Assembly: GCF_006345805.1 (NCBI RefSeq)
Contig: NW_021826561.1
Coordinates: 1 to 12,523 of the forward strand
Length of the DNA: 12,523 nt
Source of the DNA: Octopus sinensis
Taxonomy: Eukaryota
Direction of reading: 5' to 3'
Shown: positions 380 through 12,523 of the stretch, piece by piece
How positions within the stretch are numbered: the first letter of the stretch is position 1
How the letters are laid out: every line of letters begins with the position of its first letter
The notes under the pieces: generated by a model
Seen by the model: only the letters and a program-made list of their open reading frames with translations
Told to the model about the DNA's origin: nothing
The model's database searches: none
Made by a program: the position numbers and the translations under genes

Positions 380-426
380 GTGAAGTACATTTCACAACAG
401 TTTGATGACAGTGTCATCAAAAACGG
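380..426 (+). CDS. Candidate internal coding exon (47 nt; VKYISQQFDDSVIKN-G) of an unidentified host gene
   Basis: Acceptor ggtttatttttAG|G (AG 378-379) and consensus donor CGG|GTGAGT (GT 427-428). Only phase 0 is open; the other two frames hit TGA. Protein not recognised and no partner exon found in the window. Confidence 0.4.

Positions 427-980: not shown

Positions 981-1046
<66 letters not shown>
981..1046. repeat. (AAT)22 microsatellite, 5' flank of the R4/Dong element
   Basis: Perfect AAT repeat read directly. Confidence 0.98.
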
Positions 1047-1047
<1 letters not shown>

Positions 1048-1283
1048 TCTCGGCGAAAGAATTTGACAAGCTCAGAAAATATAAAGACCTGCTCATTGAA
1101 ATTGAGAAAATGTGGCATCTCAAGGCGGTTACAATACCAGTGATCGTAGGAGCACTAGGAATGATCAAGAAGGGAACCGAAAATTAATTGAGAATGATCC
1201 CTGGCTTACCATCCCTGCAAGAAGTGCAAAAGATTGTCTTAACTGGTACATCACACGTATTGAGAAGAGCATTGTCGATGTGA
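1047..1283 (+). pseudogene. Disrupted C-terminal fragment of an RLE endonuclease-domain ORF
   Basis: In-frame TAA at 1185-1187, natural stop TGA at 1281-1283, no upstream ORF because of 5' truncation. Confidence 0.8.
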
Positions 1284-1460
1284 GAACTATTACTACCCAT
1301 GTATTTTAAGTTAACTTTATTTCTATAAAAAAAAAATGAACGAACTAGTGAGTTTAGTTTAATGGCCTACCAATGTATACTATGAGTTTCTTTGCCCTAG
1401 GAGTCGGGAAGACACTCGGCAAGAAATGGAAGCAAATTTGAAAGAAGAAGAAAAACCCAT
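1047..1460 (+). mobile_element. 5'-truncated R4/Dong-clade non-LTR retrotransposon (end of restriction-like endonuclease ORF plus 3' UTR)
   Basis: Frame from 1047 reads ISAKEFDKLRKYKDLLIEIEKMWHLKAVTIPVIVGALGMIKKGTEN*LRMIPGLPSLQEVQKIVLTGTSHVLRRALSM*. This matches the K..KY.DL..E...MW......P.I.GALG C-terminus of RLE-type (R4/Dong/Rex6) elements. A 3' UTR stem-loop (1403-1420) and an A/AAG-rich tail follow, with AAT repeats on both sides. Confidence 0.85.
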
Positions 1461-1461
1461 A

Positions 1462-1482
1462 AATAATAATAGTAATAATAAT
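1462..1482. repeat. Short (AAT)3 AGT (AAT)3 tract, 3' flank of the R4/Dong element
   Basis: aataataatagtaataataat read directly. Confidence 0.9.
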
Positions 1483-1589
1483 TTAGGAACATTCCAGCAG
1501 TTTATTGCTTGTTTGTTTTGGGGTGGGGAGAGTGTAAGTTAATATTATCGCCAACAGTATTTGAATGGTATTTTGACTCCAACAAACAT

Positions 1590-2433: not shown

Positions 2434-2606
2434 TAGGCGCAGGAGTGGTTGTGTGGTAAGTAGCTTGCCTACCAACCACATGGTTCCGGGTTCATTCCCA
2501 CTGCGTGGCACCTTGGGCAAGTGTCTTCTACTATTGCCTTGGGCCGACCAAAGCCTTGTGAGTGGATTTGGTAGACGGAAACTGAAAGAAGCCCATCGCA
2601 TATATG

Positions 2607-2639
<33 letters not shown>

Positions 2640-2834
2640 TTGTATGTCTGTGTTTGTCCCCCCAACAACCGATGGCGGTGTGTTTACGTCCCCGTAACTT
2701 AGCGGTTCGGCAAAAGACACCGATAGAATAAGTACTAGGCTTCCAAAGAATAAGTCTTGGGATCGATTTCTTCGACTAAAAGGCGGTGCTAAGAGCATGG
2801 CCGCAGTCAAATGACTGAAACAAGTAAAAGAGAG
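2434..2834 (+). mobile_element. Full-length tRNA-derived SINE type A with internal (TA)n(TG)n microsatellite
   Basis: A-box-like gtggttgtgtggtaag, B-box-like gggttcattccc, CORE-like accttgggcaagtgtcttc, microsatellite ~2600-2650, 3' module ending aatgactgaaacaagtaaaagag. Homologous copies at 4643, 5581-6105 and 8975-9394. Confidence 0.9.
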
Positions 2835-3019
2835 TAATATTGATTTAGTGACAGAGAAACAGTATCTGAAGATCAAGAGATAATGTGTATTCTACTCAAA
2901 ATACTCTACATTTAGTTGTAATTAAATGAACAACTTTTGATTTGCCGAAGAATCCGTTCAACCACTTGAAGCTCCCTAATATATTTGTATGTGTTTGCGG
3001 AGGGGGTCGTGTCTTTGTG

Positions 3020-3406: not shown

Positions 3407-3635
3407 TTTCTTTATTACCCACACGGGGCTAAACATAGAGGGGACAAACAAGGACAGACAAACGGATTAAGACGATTACATCGACCCCAGTGCTTAACTG
3501 GTACTTAATTTATCGACCCCAAGAGGATGAAAGGCAAAGTCAACCTCGGCGGAATTTGAACTCAGAACGTAACGGCAGACGAAATACGGCTACGCATTTC
3601 GCCCGGCGTGCTAACGATTCTGCCAGCTCGCCGCC
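3407..3635 (-). mobile_element. Near-intact tRNA-derived SINE type B
   Basis: Minus strand starts ggcggcgagc, with A-box TGGCAGAATCGTTAG (3625-3611), B-box GAGTTCAAATTCC (3563-3551), core gcctttcatcctcttggggtcgataaattaagtaccag and tail ...gtgggtaataaagaaa. Confidence 0.9.
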
Positions 3636-3639
3636 TTTT

Positions 3640-4365: not shown

Positions 4366-4642
4366 TGTTTTTTTTTCTTTTTATTTAGTAGGAAAGATTG
4401 AACAGAAGTAAAATTACTGTGGAGATCTTGATTGTAAGTGAATGAAAAGTCACAAGTGAGGGTGAAATGGATTAAGTTTTTGTTTTATGTTTATTTTGCA
4501 AAATTGAAAGTAAATACTTGTGAAAGATTTCTCAAACTACTACAAGAAATAATTGAAAGCAGTTTGAAGCTACTATGCTAAACGCATAGCAAACACGTAA
4601 CAAAAGGCTTTTAACGTGATCTCAGAAACCTCCATGACCTCG

Positions 4643-4810
4643 TTTTGCAACCACGTGATTTTAAGTTCAGTCCCACAACGCAGCACTTCGGGCAAATATC
4701 GTCTACTATACGTCTGGGCCGACTAATATCTTGTGAGTGAATTTGGCTGACAGAAGCTGGAAGAAGCCCGTTGTATATGAGTGCGTATGTGTGTGTGTGT
4801 ATGTGTGTTT
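4643..4810 (+). mobile_element. Diverged 5' half of SINE type A ending in its microsatellite
   Basis: caaccacgtgattttaagttcagtcccac...gggcaaatatcgtctactata...gggccgac...ttgtgagtgaatttgg...gaagaagcccg aligns to 2470-2600. Confidence 0.75.
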
Positions 4811-4835
4811 GTGAAAGTGAGAGAGTGGAGAATGG

Positions 4836-5580: not shown

Positions 5581-5789
5581 TTTTACTTGTTTTACTCAAG
5601 TGACTCTGGCCATGCTGAGACAAGGCCTTGAAGAGATGTTGTCGAATGAATTGATCCCGGTACTTATTTTTTAAGCGTGATACTTATAGTATCAGTTTTT
5701 TTGCCGAAGAGCTAAGTTACGGAAACGTAAACGCACCAAAATCGGTTAAGTAGTGGCCGAATACACGCATATACGCACGTGCATGCACC

Positions 5790-5826
<37 letters not shown>

Positions 5827-5837
5827 ACACACACACA

Positions 5838-5918
<81 letters not shown>

Positions 5919-6105
5919 AAATGGGACAGGAATATATATATATATACGACGGACTTCTTTCAATTTCCACCTACCAAATTCACTCACAAGGCTTTGGTCT
6001 GCCCGAAACTATAGTACAAAACAGTTGCCCAAGTTGAAACGCAGTAAGACTGAACCCGGAACCTTGTGCTTATAAAGCAAACTTCTTACCGTAGAGCAAC
6101 GCCTA
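5581..6105 (-). mobile_element. Full-length diverged SINE type A with expanded internal (CA)n(TA)n microsatellite
   Basis: Reverse complement of head (taggcgttg..., cttgggcaac, caaagccttgtgagtgaatttggtagg) and tail (cagcatggccagagtcacttgagtaaaacaagtaaaa) match 2434-2834. Microsatellite ~5770-5947. Confidence 0.85.
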
Positions 6106-6126
6106 CAAGTATATACATACATTACG

Positions 6127-6249: not shown

Positions 6250-6420
6250 ACATACACACATGCATATACATATATATATATATACATACCTATATATATT
6301 CTTATTCTTTCTATTTTCATTTATCAACTTCCCTTTGCTTCCCCCGGTCTCTGTGCCTGTGTGTGTATGTTTATATATATATGTATGTATGTATGTATGT
6401 ATATATATATATATATTATA

Positions 6421-6470
<50 letters not shown>

Positions 6471-6594
6471 TACAGGCATGCATATACATATATATATATA
6501 CATACCTATATATATTCTTATTCTTTCTATTTCATTTATCAACTTCCCTCTCCTCCCGGTCTCTGTGCTTGTGGTGTGTATGTTTATGTACGTA

Positions 6595-8400: not shown

Positions 8401-8974
8401 TATGTTTAGGATACAATATTTATCAGAGGGTAATGTTCTGGTGATGAGATTAAACAAAGGCAGACAAAGAAAGATGGGTAGGGGAGACACTTACATTAAG
8501 AGAGAGAGAGAAGAGAGAGAGAGAGAAGCAGTGAGAGATGAAGAGAAAGCGAGAGATGTTAAAGACATGAAAACGGGAACTACATGGTTAAATGGCTAAA
8601 AAGTTTGTTGAAGAGGTAGAGAGAAAGAGAGAAATATAAAGGACTTAGTAGAGGGAATTTTTTTAAATATATCATTGTGAGTGGAAGAGAAATACTTAGC
8701 AAGATAAAAATAAAAATGCAAATCGTCCCTTCTTTTTTAAATAGCTTCTCTTAATCTTTCTCGTTCTGTGGAATTTCCACGGGTCCAACAAGTACACATA
8801 AATGTAAGAGAACCACGTATATGAATGTATATTTGCATGTGTGCTCGTAAGTATGCATGCATATATTTATGTATGCGTACGTGTGTCTCTGTGTTTGTCT
8901 GCATATGTGTGTTAGTGATTTGCATCTATGTGTTTGTATTTGCGTCCACCAACCTCATTTTTATAAAAGATGTT

Positions 8975-9130
8975 TGTTGGTTTACGTCTATGTGATTTAT
9001 CGATTCGTCGAAAAGAAATGATACTATAAGTATCAGAGTTTTAAATCAATAAACACCAAAGTAGATTTGATCCCGTAAGCTCCTCGGGGTAGTGTCTCAG
9101 CATGGTCACCGCCAATGACTAAAACCAAGC
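8975..9130 (+). mobile_element. Diverged 3' half of SINE type A
   Basis: ggtttacgtc...gattcgtcgaaaagaaatgatactataagtatcag and cagcatggtcaccgccaatgactaaaaccaag align with 2670-2825. Preceded by a degenerate TG/TA tract (8815-8940). Confidence 0.65.
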
Positions 9131-9136
9131 TAGACA

Positions 9137-9281
9137 TAAGCGTGGTTTTGATTGTAAGAATTTTCCTTCACAACCATGTGATCGTGGGTTCAGTTCACTG
9201 TGCGGCACTCTAGGCTGATGTCTTATACCAAAACCTTGTAAATTGATTCGGTAGACAAATCCACTTGCATCTATATATATA

Positions 9282-9346
<65 letters not shown>

Positions 9347-9394
9347 CGTGCGTGTGTGTGTATGTGTGTGCGTCTGTGTGTTTGTGTGTGTGTA
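9137..9394 (+). mobile_element. Diverged 5' half of SINE type A plus its (TA)(TG)n microsatellite
   Basis: caaccatgtgatcgtgggttcagttcactgtgcggcac and ccaaaaccttgtaaattgattcggtagac match the SINE A head. Microsatellite 9272-9394. Confidence 0.7.
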
Positions 9395-9398
9395 TAAC

Positions 9399-10143
9399 AC
9401 AGTATAATAATATATCATAATATTAATTCTCCGATTTGAAGCAACAATTTTTAAACACAAACAAATGACTGGAAAATGATGAGCAAGCCTCAGGCAGAAT
9501 TGAATCCACAAATTGTGTAGTTAAAAGATATTTCACAGGATACATCAAAACAGTTGTAGAAGTTTCCTTTTATCATGTAATACTATGTAACAACTTTGCG
9601 AATATATTCCATAAAGCTGACATGGATCTAAATAATACAGTGATTCTCAGCAAAGATTCTATTTTGAATAATAGATTTTAGAACAAGATGGCCAACACTT
9701 CTAAAGATGTAATACAATATCGTCTGCAATGTGAAGATAAGACAGAAAACACAATTGTTAACGACGTTAATTATTTCAACTAAACGGAGGAATATCATGT
9801 CATGTGTGTGGTTAGACACGTACGCAGACTCACATACACACACACACACACACGCATACATATATTACACGCACGCGCACATTCATAAGCACACACATAC
9901 TTAACACACACACACATGCACAATATGTGATCAAAGCGGTACATACACAGGCGCATACACTCACACAAATACGTCCACATATATACATACACATGCACAC
10001 ACACGCACACACACACACCACACACACACACATATACATATATATAGCGTGCACACACTCATATGGCGCACACATATTGCATACTCACACGCACAAGCAC
10101 AACACGAATAAAGTGAATACATAAGATGTAACATACGGTGACA

Positions 10144-10183
<40 letters not shown>

Positions 10184-10690
10184 ACACACACACACAACGC
10201 ACAGTAAAAGTAAATATAAGACTAGGGAACAATTTTCGTTGAATTAGATCACACACTTGTTTTTGACTCACTTTATATTAGAAGCCATTTCCCAACCGCA
10301 TCATTTAGTTTTGTCTGGGGAGAGTCATTTTTTTTTGTGCCTTATTATTTAAAACACTCACCGGTAAAATTTCCACTTTTTTCTTATTTTTTATTTTTCT
10401 AAAATTTTCGTTGCGTGTTGCAACCTTTTCAATAGTTTTGAGAGTCAAAAAACTATTGAAAAGGTTGCAACACGCAACGAACATTTTAGAAAAATAAAAA
10501 ATAAGGAAAAAGTGGAAATGTTACCGGTGAGTGTTTTAAATAATAAGGCACAAAAAAAAATGACTCTCCCCAGACAAAACTAAATGATGCGGTTGGGAAA
10601 TGGCTTCTAATATAAAGTGAGTCAAAAACAAGTGTGTGATCTAATTCAACGAAAATTGTTCCATAGTCTTATATTTACTTTTACTGTGCG

Positions 10691-10738
<48 letters not shown>

Positions 10739-11350
10739 GTGTGCGTGTGTATGTATATATGTGGACGTATTTGTGTGAGTGTATGAGCCTGTGTATGTAT
10801 CGCTTTGATCACATATTGTGCATGTGTGTGTGTGTGTGTTAAGTATGTGTGTGCTTATGAATGTGCGCGTGCGTGTAATATATGTATGCGTGTGTGTGTG
10901 TGTGTGTGTGTGTATGTGAGTCTGCGTACGTGTCTAACCACACACATGACATGATATTCCCCAGTTTAGTTGAAATAATTAACGTCGTTAACAATTGTGT
11001 TTTCTGTCTTATCTTCACATTGCAGACGATATTGTATTACATCTTTAGAAGTGTTGACCATCTTGCTCTAAAATCTATTATTCAAAATAGAATCTTTGCT
11101 GAGAATCACTGTATTATTTAGATCCATGTCAGCTTTATGGAATATATTCGCAAAGTTGTTACATAGTATTACATGATAAAAGGAAACTTCTACAACTGTT
11201 TTGATGTATCCTGTGAAATATCTTTTAACTACACAATTTGTGTATTCAATTCTGCCTGAGGTTAGCTCATCATTTTCCAGTCACTTGTTTGTGTTTAAAA
11301 ATTGTTGCTTCAAATCGGAGAATTAATATTATGATATATTATTATACTGT
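9399..11350. repeat. Large near-perfect inverted repeat (fold-back palindrome): arms 9399-10441 and 10445-11350, 3-nt centre
   Basis: Arms are reverse complements along their length (e.g. acagtataataatatatcataatattaattctccg at 9399 vs cggagaattaatattatgatatattattatactgt ending at 11350). About a dozen or more substitutions by eye, microsatellite length differences, and a ~110-bp block (10033-10140) present only in the left arm. Tip TTTTGA-gag-TCAAAA at 10436-10450. Confidence 0.97.
10250..10640. mobile_element. Probable palindromic MITE-like element at the core of the large inverted repeat
   Basis: Non-microsatellite self-complementary core. An independently diverged copy of one of its segments lies at 11383-11427. 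Outer boundaries are a guess. Confidence 0.4.
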
Positions 11351-11427
11351 TAAATAATATTATACTGTTCAATAATATACTGTTAAATAATAAGGCACAA
11401 AAAGAAAATGACTCTCCCAGACACAAC
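11341..11427 (+). repeat. Junction stutter (three 15-18-bp direct repeats) plus third copy of the core motif
   Basis: attatactgttaaataat / attatactgttcaataat / atactgttaaataat (11341-11391), running into aaggcacaaaaagaaaatgactctcccagacacaac, homologous to 10536-10580 and to the reverse complement of 10308-10352. Confidence 0.9.
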
Positions 11428-11589
11428 AGAATATGATTCAACACACGAACTCATATAAAGAATCTTGCAAACTAAATCCAAAACCGAAATATCATGTAGT
11501 TAACTGTACATACATACACAGATGTATTTTTTGGTTGGAAAAATATAGAGCTGTACTTATAAAATCAGAAATACGAATTTATGAATATG

Positions 11590-12523
11590 TGTGTGTGCGT
11601 GTTTGTATGTGTACTAGAGTGCGTGTACGTGTGTGTGTGTGTGTGTGTACCAGAGTGCATGTGCGTGTGTCTGTGTGTGTTTGTATGTGTACCAGAGTGC
11701 GTGTGTACCAGAGTGCATGTGCGTGTGTGTATGTGTGTGTTTGTAAGTGTACCAGAGTGCGTGTGTGCGTGTGTGCATGTGTTTGTATGTGTACCAGTGT
11801 GTGTGTGTGTGTGTGTTCCAGAGTGCATGTGCGTGTGTGTGTGTGTGTTTGTATATATACCAGAGTGCGTGTGCATGTGTGTGTGTGTTTGTAAGTGTAC
11901 CAGAGTGCGTGTGTGCGTGTGTATGTGTACCAGAGTGCGTGTGTGCGTGTGTATGTGTGCGTTTGTATGTGTACCAGAGTGCGTGTGTGCGTGTGTGTGT
12001 ATGTGTGTGTGTGTTTGTATGTATACCAGAGTGCGTGTGTATGTGTGTGGATCAGAGTGCATGTGCGTGTGTCTGTGTGTGTTTGTATGTGTACCAGAGT
12101 GCGTGTGTGCGTGTGTGTGTGTGTGTTTGTATGTGTACCAGAGTGCGTGTGTATGTGTGTTTGTATGTATACCAGAGTGCGTGTGCGTGTGTGGGTGTGT
12201 GTGTGTTTGTATGTGTACCAGAGTGCGTGTGTGCGTGTGTGTGTGTGTTTGTACGTATACCAGAGTGCGTGTGTATGTGTGTTTGTATGTATACCAGAGT
12301 GCGTGTGCGTGTGTGGGTGTGTGTGTGTTTGTATGTGTACCAGAGTGCGTGTGTGCGTGTGTGTGTGTGTGTTTGTATGTATACCAGAGTGCGTGTGTAT
12401 GTGTGTTTGTATGTATACCAGAGTGAGTGTGTTTGTATATATACCAGAGTGCGTGTGTGCGTGGGTGTGTTTTTGGTTTGTACTATACCAGAGTGCGTGT
12501 GTATGTGTGCTTGTATGTATACC
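11590..12523. repeat. GT-rich minisatellite: ~24 units anchored on TACCAGAGTGC, 16-52 bp each, running off the window end
   Basis: Anchor positions 11613, 11649, 11691, 11707 ... 12443, 12487; all spacings are even numbers. Confidence 0.95.

What the first reader, a model, noticed from the sequence alone, without database searches (positions are those of the whole stretch)
9399..11350. A ~1.95-kb fold-back palindrome with only a 3-nt centre
Seen: arms of 1043 and 906 bp, roughly 98% identical by eye outside microsatellites, meet at TTTTGA-gag-TCAAAA (with a 2-nt bulge nearby). About 850 bp of ordinary host-like flank is mirrored, well beyond any MITE-sized core. Established: long spacer-less palindromes extrude cruciforms, stall replication and are usually unstable; short inverted repeats can prime fold-back synthesis that creates large palindromes. 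Inference: a real, aged inverted duplication nucleated on a small palindromic element. If transcribed it would give ~900 bp of dsRNA, a potential ADAR or Dicer substrate in a lineage known for heavy A-to-I editing.
Basis: partly seen in the sequence, partly recalled or inferred. Interest (0 to 1): 0.75.

Follow-up and report, generated by a model that had tools for sequence, protein, structure and literature searches.

The report
Two-kilobase fold-back palindrome in octopus DNA
A 1.95-kb stretch of non-coding octopus DNA is a near-perfect mirror image of itself, most likely a real but functionless inverted duplication that has aged for roughly a million generations or more; it is a clean example of a known kind of rearrangement and cannot be proven real without the raw reads.

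Summary
Window 9399-10441 and 10445-11350 are inverted copies meeting at TTTTGA-GAG-TCAAAA. Over 892 aligned bases there are 15 substitutions (98.3% identity), three small length differences at (CA)n tracts (6, 4 and 1 nt), and one 148-nt block (10006-10153) present only in the left arm.

The arm differences look biological, not like read errors:
- They are substitutions, 8 transitions and 7 transversions, spread evenly from centre to edge.
- All 22 homopolymer runs, including a T9, have the same length in both arms.
- Both arms end in different, unique flanks.

No target-site duplication, coding remnant or further copy of the arms was found. The one exception is a 51-nt fragment 32 nt beyond the right arm, about 90% like part of the arm. 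The host is an Octopus: the window's SINE matches only Octopus bimaculoides proteins and DNA.

Best reading (about 0.55): one fold-back-primed inverted duplication at a 6-bp inverted repeat, since aged. Rivals are an assembly artefact (about 0.15) and a long-TIR element or two paralogous copies (about 0.15).

A transcript would fold into about 880 bp of duplex. Transcription, editing and small RNAs could not be tested. Long near-perfect hairpin loci are already reported as unusually common in octopus. Interest is modest.

The parts
9399..10441 (.). Left arm of the palindrome (1043 nt). From outside to centre: a unique AT-rich part 9399-9810, a CA-rich microsatellite zone about 9810-10197, and the inner part 10198-10441.
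   Evidence: Gapped alignment to the reverse complement of the right arm: 892 aligned nt, 15 substitutions. Unique part 98.06% identical to its mirror copy, E = 0.0.
10442..10444 (.). Centre GAG (3 nt), flanked by the 6-bp inverted repeat TTTTGA (10436-10441) / TCAAAA (10445-10450). A 2-nt AA bulge lies at 10451-10452.
   Evidence: Read directly from the sequence. DNA hairpin fold of 10295-10593.
10445..11350 (.). Right arm (906 nt): inner part 10445-10690, TG-rich zone 10691-10938, unique part 10939-11350.
10006..10153 (.). 148-nt block present only in the left arm, lying between two (CA)n tracts. The right arm has a single merged (TG)n tract (10692-10754) at the matching place. Read as a deletion between the two tracts in the right arm, or an equivalent unequal event.
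   Evidence: Gap in the arm alignment. The unique middle of the block has no other copy in the window.
10536..10585 (+). Segment M inside the right arm (mirror copy at 10303-10352 in the left arm). It is the part of the arm that has a third, diverged copy outside the palindrome.
   Evidence: BLAST within the window: 93.5% over 46 nt, 90.2% over 51 nt, E about 5e-11 to 4e-13.
11383..11432 (+). M2, a 51-nt fragment about 90% like M, in the same orientation as the right arm and 32 nt beyond its end. No similarity continues on either side. It is older than the arm duplication.
   Evidence: Five differences in 51 nt have P = 0.002 at the arm-to-arm rate.
11336..11392 (+). Right junction. An 18-nt unit, made of the arm end TATTATACTGT plus TAAATAA (the first 7 nt of M2), is repeated in tandem about 3 times.
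   Evidence: Tandem Repeats Finder: period 18, 3.3 copies. Direct repeat family D14. Sequence.
9120..9393 (+). Left flank: a SINE head (about 9120-9283) and its (TG)55 tract (9284-9393), which abuts the outer end of the left arm. It is not mirrored on the right.
   Evidence: Similarity to the other SINE copies of the window. TRF. No inverted match to 11351-12523.
11588..12523 (+). Right flank: a TG-rich satellite with units of about 42-44 and 122 nt, running off the end of the window. It has the same TG strand as the left flank, so it is not a continuation of the mirror.
   Evidence: TRF. A similar array occurs in O. bimaculoides L003 10224-10342.

Best explanation
This is a genuine germ-line inverted duplication of about 1.04 kb of ordinary non-coding, microsatellite-rich octopus DNA, made in one event.

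Likely mechanism (inferred): a 3' end created by a break or a stalled fork just right of ...CAATAGTTTTGAGAGTCAAAA folded back on itself through the 6-bp inverted repeat TTTTGA/TCAAAA with a 3-nt loop. It then primed synthesis back along its own strand, copying the adjacent roughly 1 kb in reverse. A second junction closed the copy at 11350/11351, where the arm end is joined to TAAATAA... and the junction unit later stuttered into three tandem copies.

Later changes (shown by the sequence): the two arms have since accumulated 1.7% substitutions, microsatellite length changes, a 2-nt A-run change next to the centre, and a 148-nt deletion between two (CA)n tracts. That amounts to roughly 0.85 to 8.5 million generations at an assumed mutation rate of 1e-8 to 1e-9 per site.

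Function: I see no evidence for one. If a transcript reads through, it would fold into a hairpin of roughly 880 bp and would be an expected ADAR hyper-editing substrate, and possibly a Dicer substrate. That would be a passive consequence, not a designed role.
For: Shown:
- Arms, centre and indels are as described.
- The differences are substitutions (8 transitions, 7 transversions) and are spread evenly: inner 4/257 against outer 11/635, Fisher p = 1.
- All 22 homopolymer runs of 4 nt or more, including a T9, have identical length in both arms.
- The flanks are unique and unrelated to each other.
- There is no target-site duplication above chance: best 4 nt, the same as random position pairs.
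- No protein family or homologue was found for any arm ORF.
- No further arm copy was found in the window or in about 67 kb of O. bimaculoides DNA, where the SINE gives 25 hits.
- The predicted RNA hairpin has an MFE of -1533 (plus strand) or -1558 (minus strand) kcal/mol, about 880 arm-to-arm pairs, and a longest unbroken helix of 176 or 279 bp.

From the literature:
- Natural inverted repeats of 3-15 bp lie at the centres of fold-back-primed inverted duplications (PMC10622511).
- Hyper-editing targets long, nearly perfect dsRNA, and octopus has an exceptionally high fraction of such loci (PMC5625713).

Inferred: the order of events, the second junction and the age.
Against: - No reads, no second assembly and no orthologous locus could be examined. 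All DNA and protein look-ups for the region came back empty, so the physical reality of the structure is unproven.
- The sequencing technology is unknown. The window has no N and spans long microsatellites, so it probably comes from a long-read assembly, the type in which fold-back reads occur (PMC12870357).
- Long palindromes with short or absent spacers are reported as unstable in bacteria, yeast and human cells (PMC7999016). Persistence long enough to reach 1.7% divergence with an intact centre is therefore somewhat unexpected.
- A simple fold-back at a broken end predicts a copy that runs on to the chromosome end. The finite arm needs a second switch that I can only infer.
- The 51-nt M2 fragment shows that at least part of the arm has a relative elsewhere.
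Confidence: 0.55

Rival explanations
1. Assembly or read artefact. A fold-back (template plus complement) long read, or a mis-traversal of an inverted repeat in the assembly graph, created a palindrome that is not in the genome. The arm differences would come from unpolished errors or from the two haplotypes of a heterozygous animal.
For: - Fold-back artefact reads make up about 0.55-0.6% of ONT genomic reads. They are near-perfect palindromes, often with fewer than 11 nt between the halves (PMC12870357).
- Whole-genome amplification also yields palindromic reads (PMC6218980, abstract as listed).
- The window looks like a long-read assembly: no N and long microsatellites spanned.
- The structure could not be confirmed in any independent data set.
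Against: - Artefact arms come from one molecule and should be identical after consensus, or should differ mainly by homopolymer indels. Here there are 15 substitutions, none of 22 homopolymer runs differs in length, and there is a clean 148-nt indel bounded by CA tracts.
- A fold-back join should be followed by the mirror image of the left flank. Instead both flanks are unique and unrelated for more than 1 kb, so a second independent misjoin at 11350 would be needed.
- No adapter-like sequence lies at the centre (sequence).
Confidence: 0.15
2. A mobile or dispersed repeat, not a local duplication. Either it is a foldback-type or long-TIR non-autonomous transposon whose two 1-kb arms are its terminal inverted repeats, or it is two copies of a roughly 1-kb dispersed repeat lying head to head.
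For: - A 51-nt piece of the arm has a diverged third copy 32 nt beyond the right arm, so part of the arm belongs to something repeated.
- Palindromic DNA transposon derivatives are known hairpin sources in other animals, for example the palindromic Harbinger repeats of Xenopus (PMC5625713).
- Elements with TIRs of about 1 kb exist, such as Foldback and Galileo of Drosophila (my own knowledge, not tested here).
- The genomic copy number could not be measured.
Against: - There is no target-site duplication above chance level.
- The arm has no other copy in the window or in about 67 kb of O. bimaculoides DNA, where the SINE occurs 25 times. This excludes only very high copy numbers.
- The arms look like ordinary intergenic DNA: microsatellites, an AT-rich unique stretch and no coding remnant.
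- Similarity to M2 stops abruptly on both sides.
- Two independent insertions ending at exactly the same base on each side of a 3-nt centre would be a coincidence.
Confidence: 0.15
3. A selected hairpin-RNA gene. The palindrome is transcribed and maintained because its long dsRNA yields endo-siRNAs, as hpRNA loci do in Drosophila, or because it titrates or recruits ADAR.
For: - The predicted RNA hairpin has about 880 bp with unbroken helices up to 176-279 bp.
- hpRNA loci that arise by inverted duplication are known in Drosophila (PMC10317233, PMC10292708, abstracts as listed).
- Octopus shows very high hyper-editing of long dsRNA (PMC5625713).
Against: - There is no evidence of transcription.
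- The arms have no similarity to any coding sequence that could serve as a target.
- Substitutions between the arms are as frequent in the inner as in the outer part, and they include pair-breaking transversions (7 of 15), so there is no sign of selection for pairing.
- Rfam gives only sub-threshold generic hairpin matches: MIR5380 at 79 bits against a gathering score of 150.
Confidence: 0.07

Closest known systems
Fold-back (snap-back-primed) inverted duplications, also called foldback inversions, described in yeast and in cancer genomes
   Same: Two adjoining inverted copies of ordinary flanking DNA. A short natural inverted repeat (here 6 bp with a 3-nt loop) lies exactly at the centre, within the 3-15 bp range reported (PMC10622511). 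The whole arm is of one age.
   Different: The described events make hairpin-capped, then dicentric chromosomes whose copy runs on for many kilobases until a secondary rearrangement. Here the copy is only about 1 kb and is closed by a local second junction. This is a germ-line, apparently fixed and aged structure, not a somatic or laboratory product.
Replicative template-switch rearrangements (FoSTeS/MMBIR-type inverted duplications; my own knowledge, not tested)
   Same: A small local inverted duplication with two novel junctions. One junction shows short repeated sequence and stuttering (the 18-nt unit repeated 3 times at 11336-11392).
   Different: Microhomology at the second junction cannot be established without the ancestral allele. 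No direct-orientation duplicated segment (a DUP-TRP/INV-DUP pattern) is seen.
Palindromic AT-rich repeats (PATRRs) and other long near-perfect palindromes of the human genome
   Same: Near-perfect, almost spacer-less and non-coding. The inner arms look AT-rich by eye; the whole left arm is 35% G+C. The centre is strongly predicted to extrude as a hairpin or cruciform.
   Different: PATRRs are 200-600 bp and more than 90% AT (PMC7999016). This one is 1.95 kb, 35% G+C, and carries microsatellites. No rearrangement hotspot behaviour is known for it.
Foldback, Galileo and MITE-type transposons with long terminal inverted repeats
   Same: Two long inverted arms with almost nothing between them, and microsatellite-like tracts inside the arms.
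   Different: There is no target-site duplication, no evidence of multiple copies and no characteristic terminal motif.
Inverted SINE pairs and palindromic repeats that form ADAR hyper-editing substrates
   Same: The locus would give long, nearly perfect intramolecular dsRNA if transcribed. It lies in a genome where such loci are unusually frequent (4.4e-3 of loci, PMC5625713).
   Different: The ordinary octopus inverted pairs sampled here are SINE copies at 65-91% identity with spacers of 423 nt or more. This palindrome is 98% identical, about 900 bp per arm, has a 3-nt spacer and is not made of SINEs.
Fold-back read artefacts of long-read sequencing
   Same: A near-perfect palindrome with almost nothing between the halves (PMC12870357).
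   Different: The arms differ by substitutions and a 148-nt indel, not by homopolymer errors, and unique flanks lie on both sides.

Membership tests
Fold-back-primed inverted duplication | Two copies of the same DNA in inverted orientation, adjoining with at most a few nucleotides between them | tested here: met
   Arms 9399-10441 and 10445-11350 with a 3-nt centre.
Fold-back-primed inverted duplication | A short natural inverted repeat (3-15 bp) at the exact centre that could prime the fold-back | tested here: met
   TTTTGA / TCAAAA, 6 bp with the 3-nt loop GAG. The range is taken from PMC10622511.
Fold-back-primed inverted duplication | The whole arm was created at one time, so divergence is uniform from centre to edge | tested here: met
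   4/257 inner against 11/635 outer substitutions, Fisher p = 1.
Fold-back-primed inverted duplication | An unduplicated ancestral allele exists in relatives or other individuals | not testable with these tools
   No orthologous or allelic DNA could be reached. Only 80 kb of unrelated O. bimaculoides loci were available.
Foldback / long-TIR transposon or MITE | Target-site duplication directly flanking the two termini | tested here: not met
   The best flanking direct repeat is 4 nt even with boundary shifts of up to 8 nt. That equals the typical value for random position pairs.
Foldback / long-TIR transposon or MITE | Several copies in the genome with the same termini | tested here: inconclusive
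   No second copy in the window or in about 67 kb of O. bimaculoides DNA. One 51-nt internal fragment, M2, exists. The genome itself was not searchable.
Long-read fold-back artefact | The halves derive from one molecule, so they are identical except for sequencing-type errors | tested here: not met
   15 substitutions, none of 22 homopolymer runs differing in length, and a 148-nt indel bounded by CA tracts.
Long-read fold-back artefact | No other reads support the breakpoint | not testable with these tools
   Raw reads are not available.
hpRNA / endo-siRNA locus | A long, near-perfect intramolecular RNA duplex | tested here: met
   About 880 arm-to-arm pairs, MFE -1533 or -1558 kcal/mol.
hpRNA / endo-siRNA locus | The arms are derived from, and complementary to, a target gene | tested here: not met
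   No homologue for any arm ORF. No Pfam family: the only hit has E = 0.025, below the cut-off.
hpRNA / endo-siRNA locus or ADAR hyper-editing substrate | Transcription, plus 21-22-nt small RNAs or clustered A-to-G mismatches | not testable with these tools
   No RNA data are available.
miRNA precursor families (Rfam MIR5380, mir-9261 and others) | The score reaches the family's gathering threshold | tested here: not met
   79.4 against 150 bits, and 57.5 against 86 bits. Hits occur on both strands at the centre, which is generic hairpin matching.

The most novel reading that the evidence does not exclude
Octopus germ lines tolerate an almost spacer-less 2-kb palindrome for something like a million generations, and may make use of it. 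On this reading the locus is transcribed (perhaps as part of an intron) and serves as a dedicated source of very long perfect dsRNA for ADAR or Dicer. It would be one of a class of young fold-back duplications that helps explain why octopus has so many near-perfect dsRNA loci.
Probability: 0.1. Interest if true: 0.55.

Novelty: new member of a known kind. Interest (0 to 1): 0.3.

Why it matters
If real, this is a tidy natural example of a small fold-back inverted duplication in an animal germ line. The priming inverted repeat is still visible at the centre, and there is enough later divergence to show that a nearly spacer-less 2-kb palindrome can persist. That bears on two questions: how stable such palindromes are outside yeast and mammals, and where the unusually abundant long dsRNA of octopus transcriptomes comes from. 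On its own it is one locus with no sign of function. Its main practical value is as a test case for checking long-read assemblies for fold-back artefacts.

Tried and rejected
- Exact look-up of 10 ORFs in and around the palindrome in the 15-billion-protein collection found none.
- A homology search with a concatenation of all arm, centre and flank ORFs gave no hit. This says nothing about copy number. A LINE fragment of the window found only one close relative (93%) in the whole collection, so almost no DNA of this species is held there.
- Exact DNA pattern scans for the M motif and for a unique arm 23-mer gave 0 matches each in JGI metagenomes (twice), IMG/VR and the GTDB genomes.
- Rfam gave only sub-threshold hairpin matches at the centre, and there are no tRNA genes.
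- I looked for a continuation of the mirror beyond the arms, in case it was hidden by the SINE on the left or the satellite on the right. None was found, and both flanks carry TG on the same strand.
- I tested whether M2 is the start of a longer diverged copy of the inner arm. There is no similarity beyond 51 nt, and the alignment scores fall within the shuffled range.
- I tried to tell which arm is the original from strand composition. The skew of the left arm comes from its microsatellites, and unique DNA shows no consistent strand bias.
- A target-site duplication scan came out at chance level.
- A Pfam scan of the arm ORFs found nothing above the cut-off.
- A literature look-up of the ENA sample that holds the related LINE copy found no paper.
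- I considered searching with the 16-aa candidate micro-exon (380-426) to find the host gene and its orthologues. I did not do it: the query is too short, and the three protein searches were better spent elsewhere.
Full report

Yes. The repeat search lists inverted pairs 9399-9864/10885-11350 (466 nt, 97%) and 10183-10439/10449-10705 (257 nt, 98%, 9 nt apart). A gapped alignment of the left side against the reverse complement of the right side joins them into one palindrome of five collinear blocks. It has 892 aligned positions and 15 substitutions, 98.3% identity.

The gaps are:
- 6 nt and 4 nt extra in the right arm, both inside CA/TG tracts;
- 1 nt at the edge of a CA tract;
- a 148-nt block (10006-10153) found only in the left arm, lying between two (CA)n tracts. 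The right arm has a single merged (TG)n tract at that place.

The centre reads CAATAG-TTTTGA-GAG-TCAAAA-AA-CTATTG, with GAG at 10442-10444 and the AA bulge at 10451-10452.

Chance is not an issue. The microsatellite-free outer 412 nt match their mirror at 98.06% with E = 0.0 and match nothing else in the window. The central 299 nt fold as a DNA hairpin at -163.6 kcal/mol, against -29.8 +/- 3.4 for shuffles.

**2. What surrounds it?**

The window is animal DNA full of microsatellites and SINEs. ORFs read from the window's SINE (2434-2860) hit only four proteins in 5.8 billion clusters, and all four are annotated in Octopus bimaculoides. In 80 kb of the O. bimaculoides assembly fetched through those proteins, the SINE recurs 25 times at up to 88-92% nucleotide identity. 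So the host is an Octopus, though the species is not determined. The window has no N and spans (TG)55 and (AT)30 tracts, which suggests a long-read assembly; this is an inference.

On the left, the arm abuts the (TG)n tract of a SINE head (9120-9393). On the right, the arm end is followed by:
- a stuttered 18-nt unit (11336-11392);
- a 51-nt fragment M2 (11383-11432);
- 155 nt of unique DNA;
- a TG-rich satellite that runs off the end of the window.

The two flanks are unrelated to each other, and both carry TG on the same strand. The mirror therefore really stops at 9399 and 11350.

**3. Do the arm differences look like errors or like evolution?**

They look like evolution.
- There are 15 substitutions, 8 transitions and 7 transversions.
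- They are spread evenly: 4 in the inner 257 nt and 11 in the outer 635 nt, Fisher p = 1.
- Every one of the 22 homopolymer runs of 4 nt or more inside the aligned blocks, including a T9, has the same length in both arms.
- Length changes occur only in dinucleotide tracts and in the A-run beside the centre.
- The 148-nt indel has CA tracts at both ends, the signature of slippage or unequal exchange between two microsatellites.

Fold-back read artefacts are halves of one molecule. They are described as near-perfect palindromes and occur in about 0.55-0.6% of ONT genomic reads (PMC12870357). After consensus, such arms should be identical or should differ mainly by indels. A contig following such a read should also continue into the mirror image of the left flank. 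Neither is seen here. An artefact would therefore need a second, independent misjoin at 11350, plus arms drawn from two haplotypes or paralogues. I rate that at about 0.15. Without reads it cannot be excluded.

**4. Is it a transposon?**

I found no support for that.
- The best direct repeat flanking the arms, allowing the boundaries to shift by up to 8 nt, is 4 nt. That is the typical value for random pairs of positions in this window.
- No arm ORF has a homologue or a Pfam family.
- There is no second copy of the arms in the window.
- There is none in about 67 kb of O. bimaculoides DNA either. That sample only excludes SINE-like abundance.
- The inverted pairs in that sample are all SINE pairs at 65-91% identity with spacers of 423 nt or more. 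So this palindrome is not the ordinary octopus kind of inverted repeat.

The one sign of repetitiveness is M2. It is 51 nt, about 90% like 10536-10585, and has the orientation of the right arm. Similarity stops on both sides. Its 5 differences in 51 nt are too many for it to be as young as the arm duplication (P = 0.002). It is either a fragment of a dispersed repeat or an old local copy; I cannot tell which.

**5. How did it most likely arise?**

The centre is a 6-bp inverted repeat with a 3-nt loop. Natural inverted repeats of 3-15 bp lie at the centres of inverted duplications formed by fold-back priming at resected breaks (PMC10622511). The uniform divergence says the whole arm, including the inner 257 nt, was made at once.

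My best account is as follows. A 3' end just right of ...TTTTGAGAGTCAAAA snapped back, and synthesis copied about 1 kb of the adjacent DNA in reverse. A second switch or joining closed the copy at 11350/11351. That junction (arm end TATTATACTGT plus TAAATAA, the first bases of M2) was later triplicated in tandem, so it existed before the stutter.

The steps after the fold-back are inferred. Which arm is the template cannot be told, because there is no outgroup and the strand composition of unique DNA is uninformative.

The Jukes-Cantor distance of 0.017 corresponds to about 0.85-8.5 million generations for assumed mutation rates of 1e-8 to 1e-9 per site. It would be more if the arms exchange sequence.

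**6. What would it do?**

Nothing is shown. A transcript of either strand would fold into one long hairpin: MFE -1533 or -1558 kcal/mol, about 880 arm-to-arm pairs, and unbroken helices up to 176 or 279 bp. Hyper-editing by ADAR targets just such long, nearly perfect dsRNA. Octopus has both the highest hyper-editing signal and an exceptionally high fraction of loci able to form such dsRNA, 4.4e-3 (PMC5625713).

I see no sign of selection for pairing: 7 of the 15 differences are transversions that break pairs. There is no target-gene homology of the kind that defines Drosophila hpRNA loci. The Rfam matches at the centre are generic hairpin hits far below threshold. Transcription could not be tested. 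A possible 47-nt exon at 380-426 on the plus strand is only a splice-site-flanked ORF and was not verified.

**7. What remains odd**

Long palindromes with little or no spacer are reported as fragile in bacteria, yeast and human cells (PMC7999016). Yet this one has kept a symmetric centre while diverging by 1.7%. Over the central 37 nt per side, only about 0.6 substitutions are expected, so the intact centre itself is not surprising. The persistence of the whole structure is the point of interest. It is also the main reason to insist on read-level confirmation.

**8. Verdict**

'Real and aged' is favoured by the sequence but unproven. 'Nucleated on a small palindromic element' reduces to a 6-bp inverted repeat. 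The dsRNA potential is confirmed in silico only.
- It is a new example of a known kind of rearrangement, in a genome already known to be rich in hairpin-forming loci.
- Interest is 0.3.

Noticed in passing
window 2434-2860 (+), 5589-6117 (-), 4611-4815 (+), 8941-9393 (+): Copies of a composite octopus SINE: a tRNA-like head, a (TG)n tract and a tail of about 200 nt. Two of them (2428-2613 and 5932-6117) form a 78% inverted pair 3.3 kb apart. The family matches O. bimaculoides DNA at up to 88-92%, with 25 hits in 80 kb.
   Followed up: partly
P0109-P0112 (O. bimaculoides proteins): Annotated O. bimaculoides proteins contain stretches that align to translated SINE sequence. They are a UBC-core-domain protein, actin-related protein 10 isoform X1 and two uncharacterised proteins. 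This is either SINE exonisation or gene-model error.
   Followed up: no
window 1039-1483 (+); L001 1449-1899: A 5'-truncated 3' end of a LINE: the reverse-transcriptase C-terminal region with an in-frame stop, a 3' UTR and a (TAA)-like tail. It is 92% identical to an ENA metagenome contig (ERZ22665968) whose upstream ORF carries RVT_1. A (TAA)22 tract lies just upstream at 980-1047.
   Followed up: partly
window 3470-3637 and 1593-1620: A second SINE-like family, sharing the motif ...GATTTGAACTCAGAACGTAA. It has at least eight matches at 81-92% in the 25-kb O. bimaculoides locus L003 (listing truncated).
   Followed up: partly
window 11588-12523 (runs off the end): A TG-rich satellite with nested periods of about 42-44 and 122 nt (core ...GTGTACCAGAGTGCGTGTG...). 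A short related array occurs in O. bimaculoides at L003 10224-10342.
   Followed up: partly
window 380-426 (+): A candidate 47-nt exon: ttatttttag|GTGAAG...AACGG|gtgagt, with only one open frame (VKYISQQFDDSVIKNG). It contains a perfect 9-bp inverted repeat with a 3-nt loop (TTTGATGAC-AGT-GTCATCAAA, 401-421). If the exon is real, the palindrome could lie in a downstream intron of a plus-strand gene.
   Followed up: no
window 6256-6361 and 6470-6573: A local direct duplication of about 105 nt with a period of about 215 nt (88-96% identity in pieces), embedded in (TA)n, (TAGA)30 and (TATG)n microsatellites.
   Followed up: no
L002-L004 (O. bimaculoides GCA_001194135.2): The fetched O. bimaculoides loci carry many N runs: 1.3-10.5 kb of N per 25-30 kb. 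The window has none. The window therefore probably comes from a different, long-read Octopus assembly.
   Followed up: no
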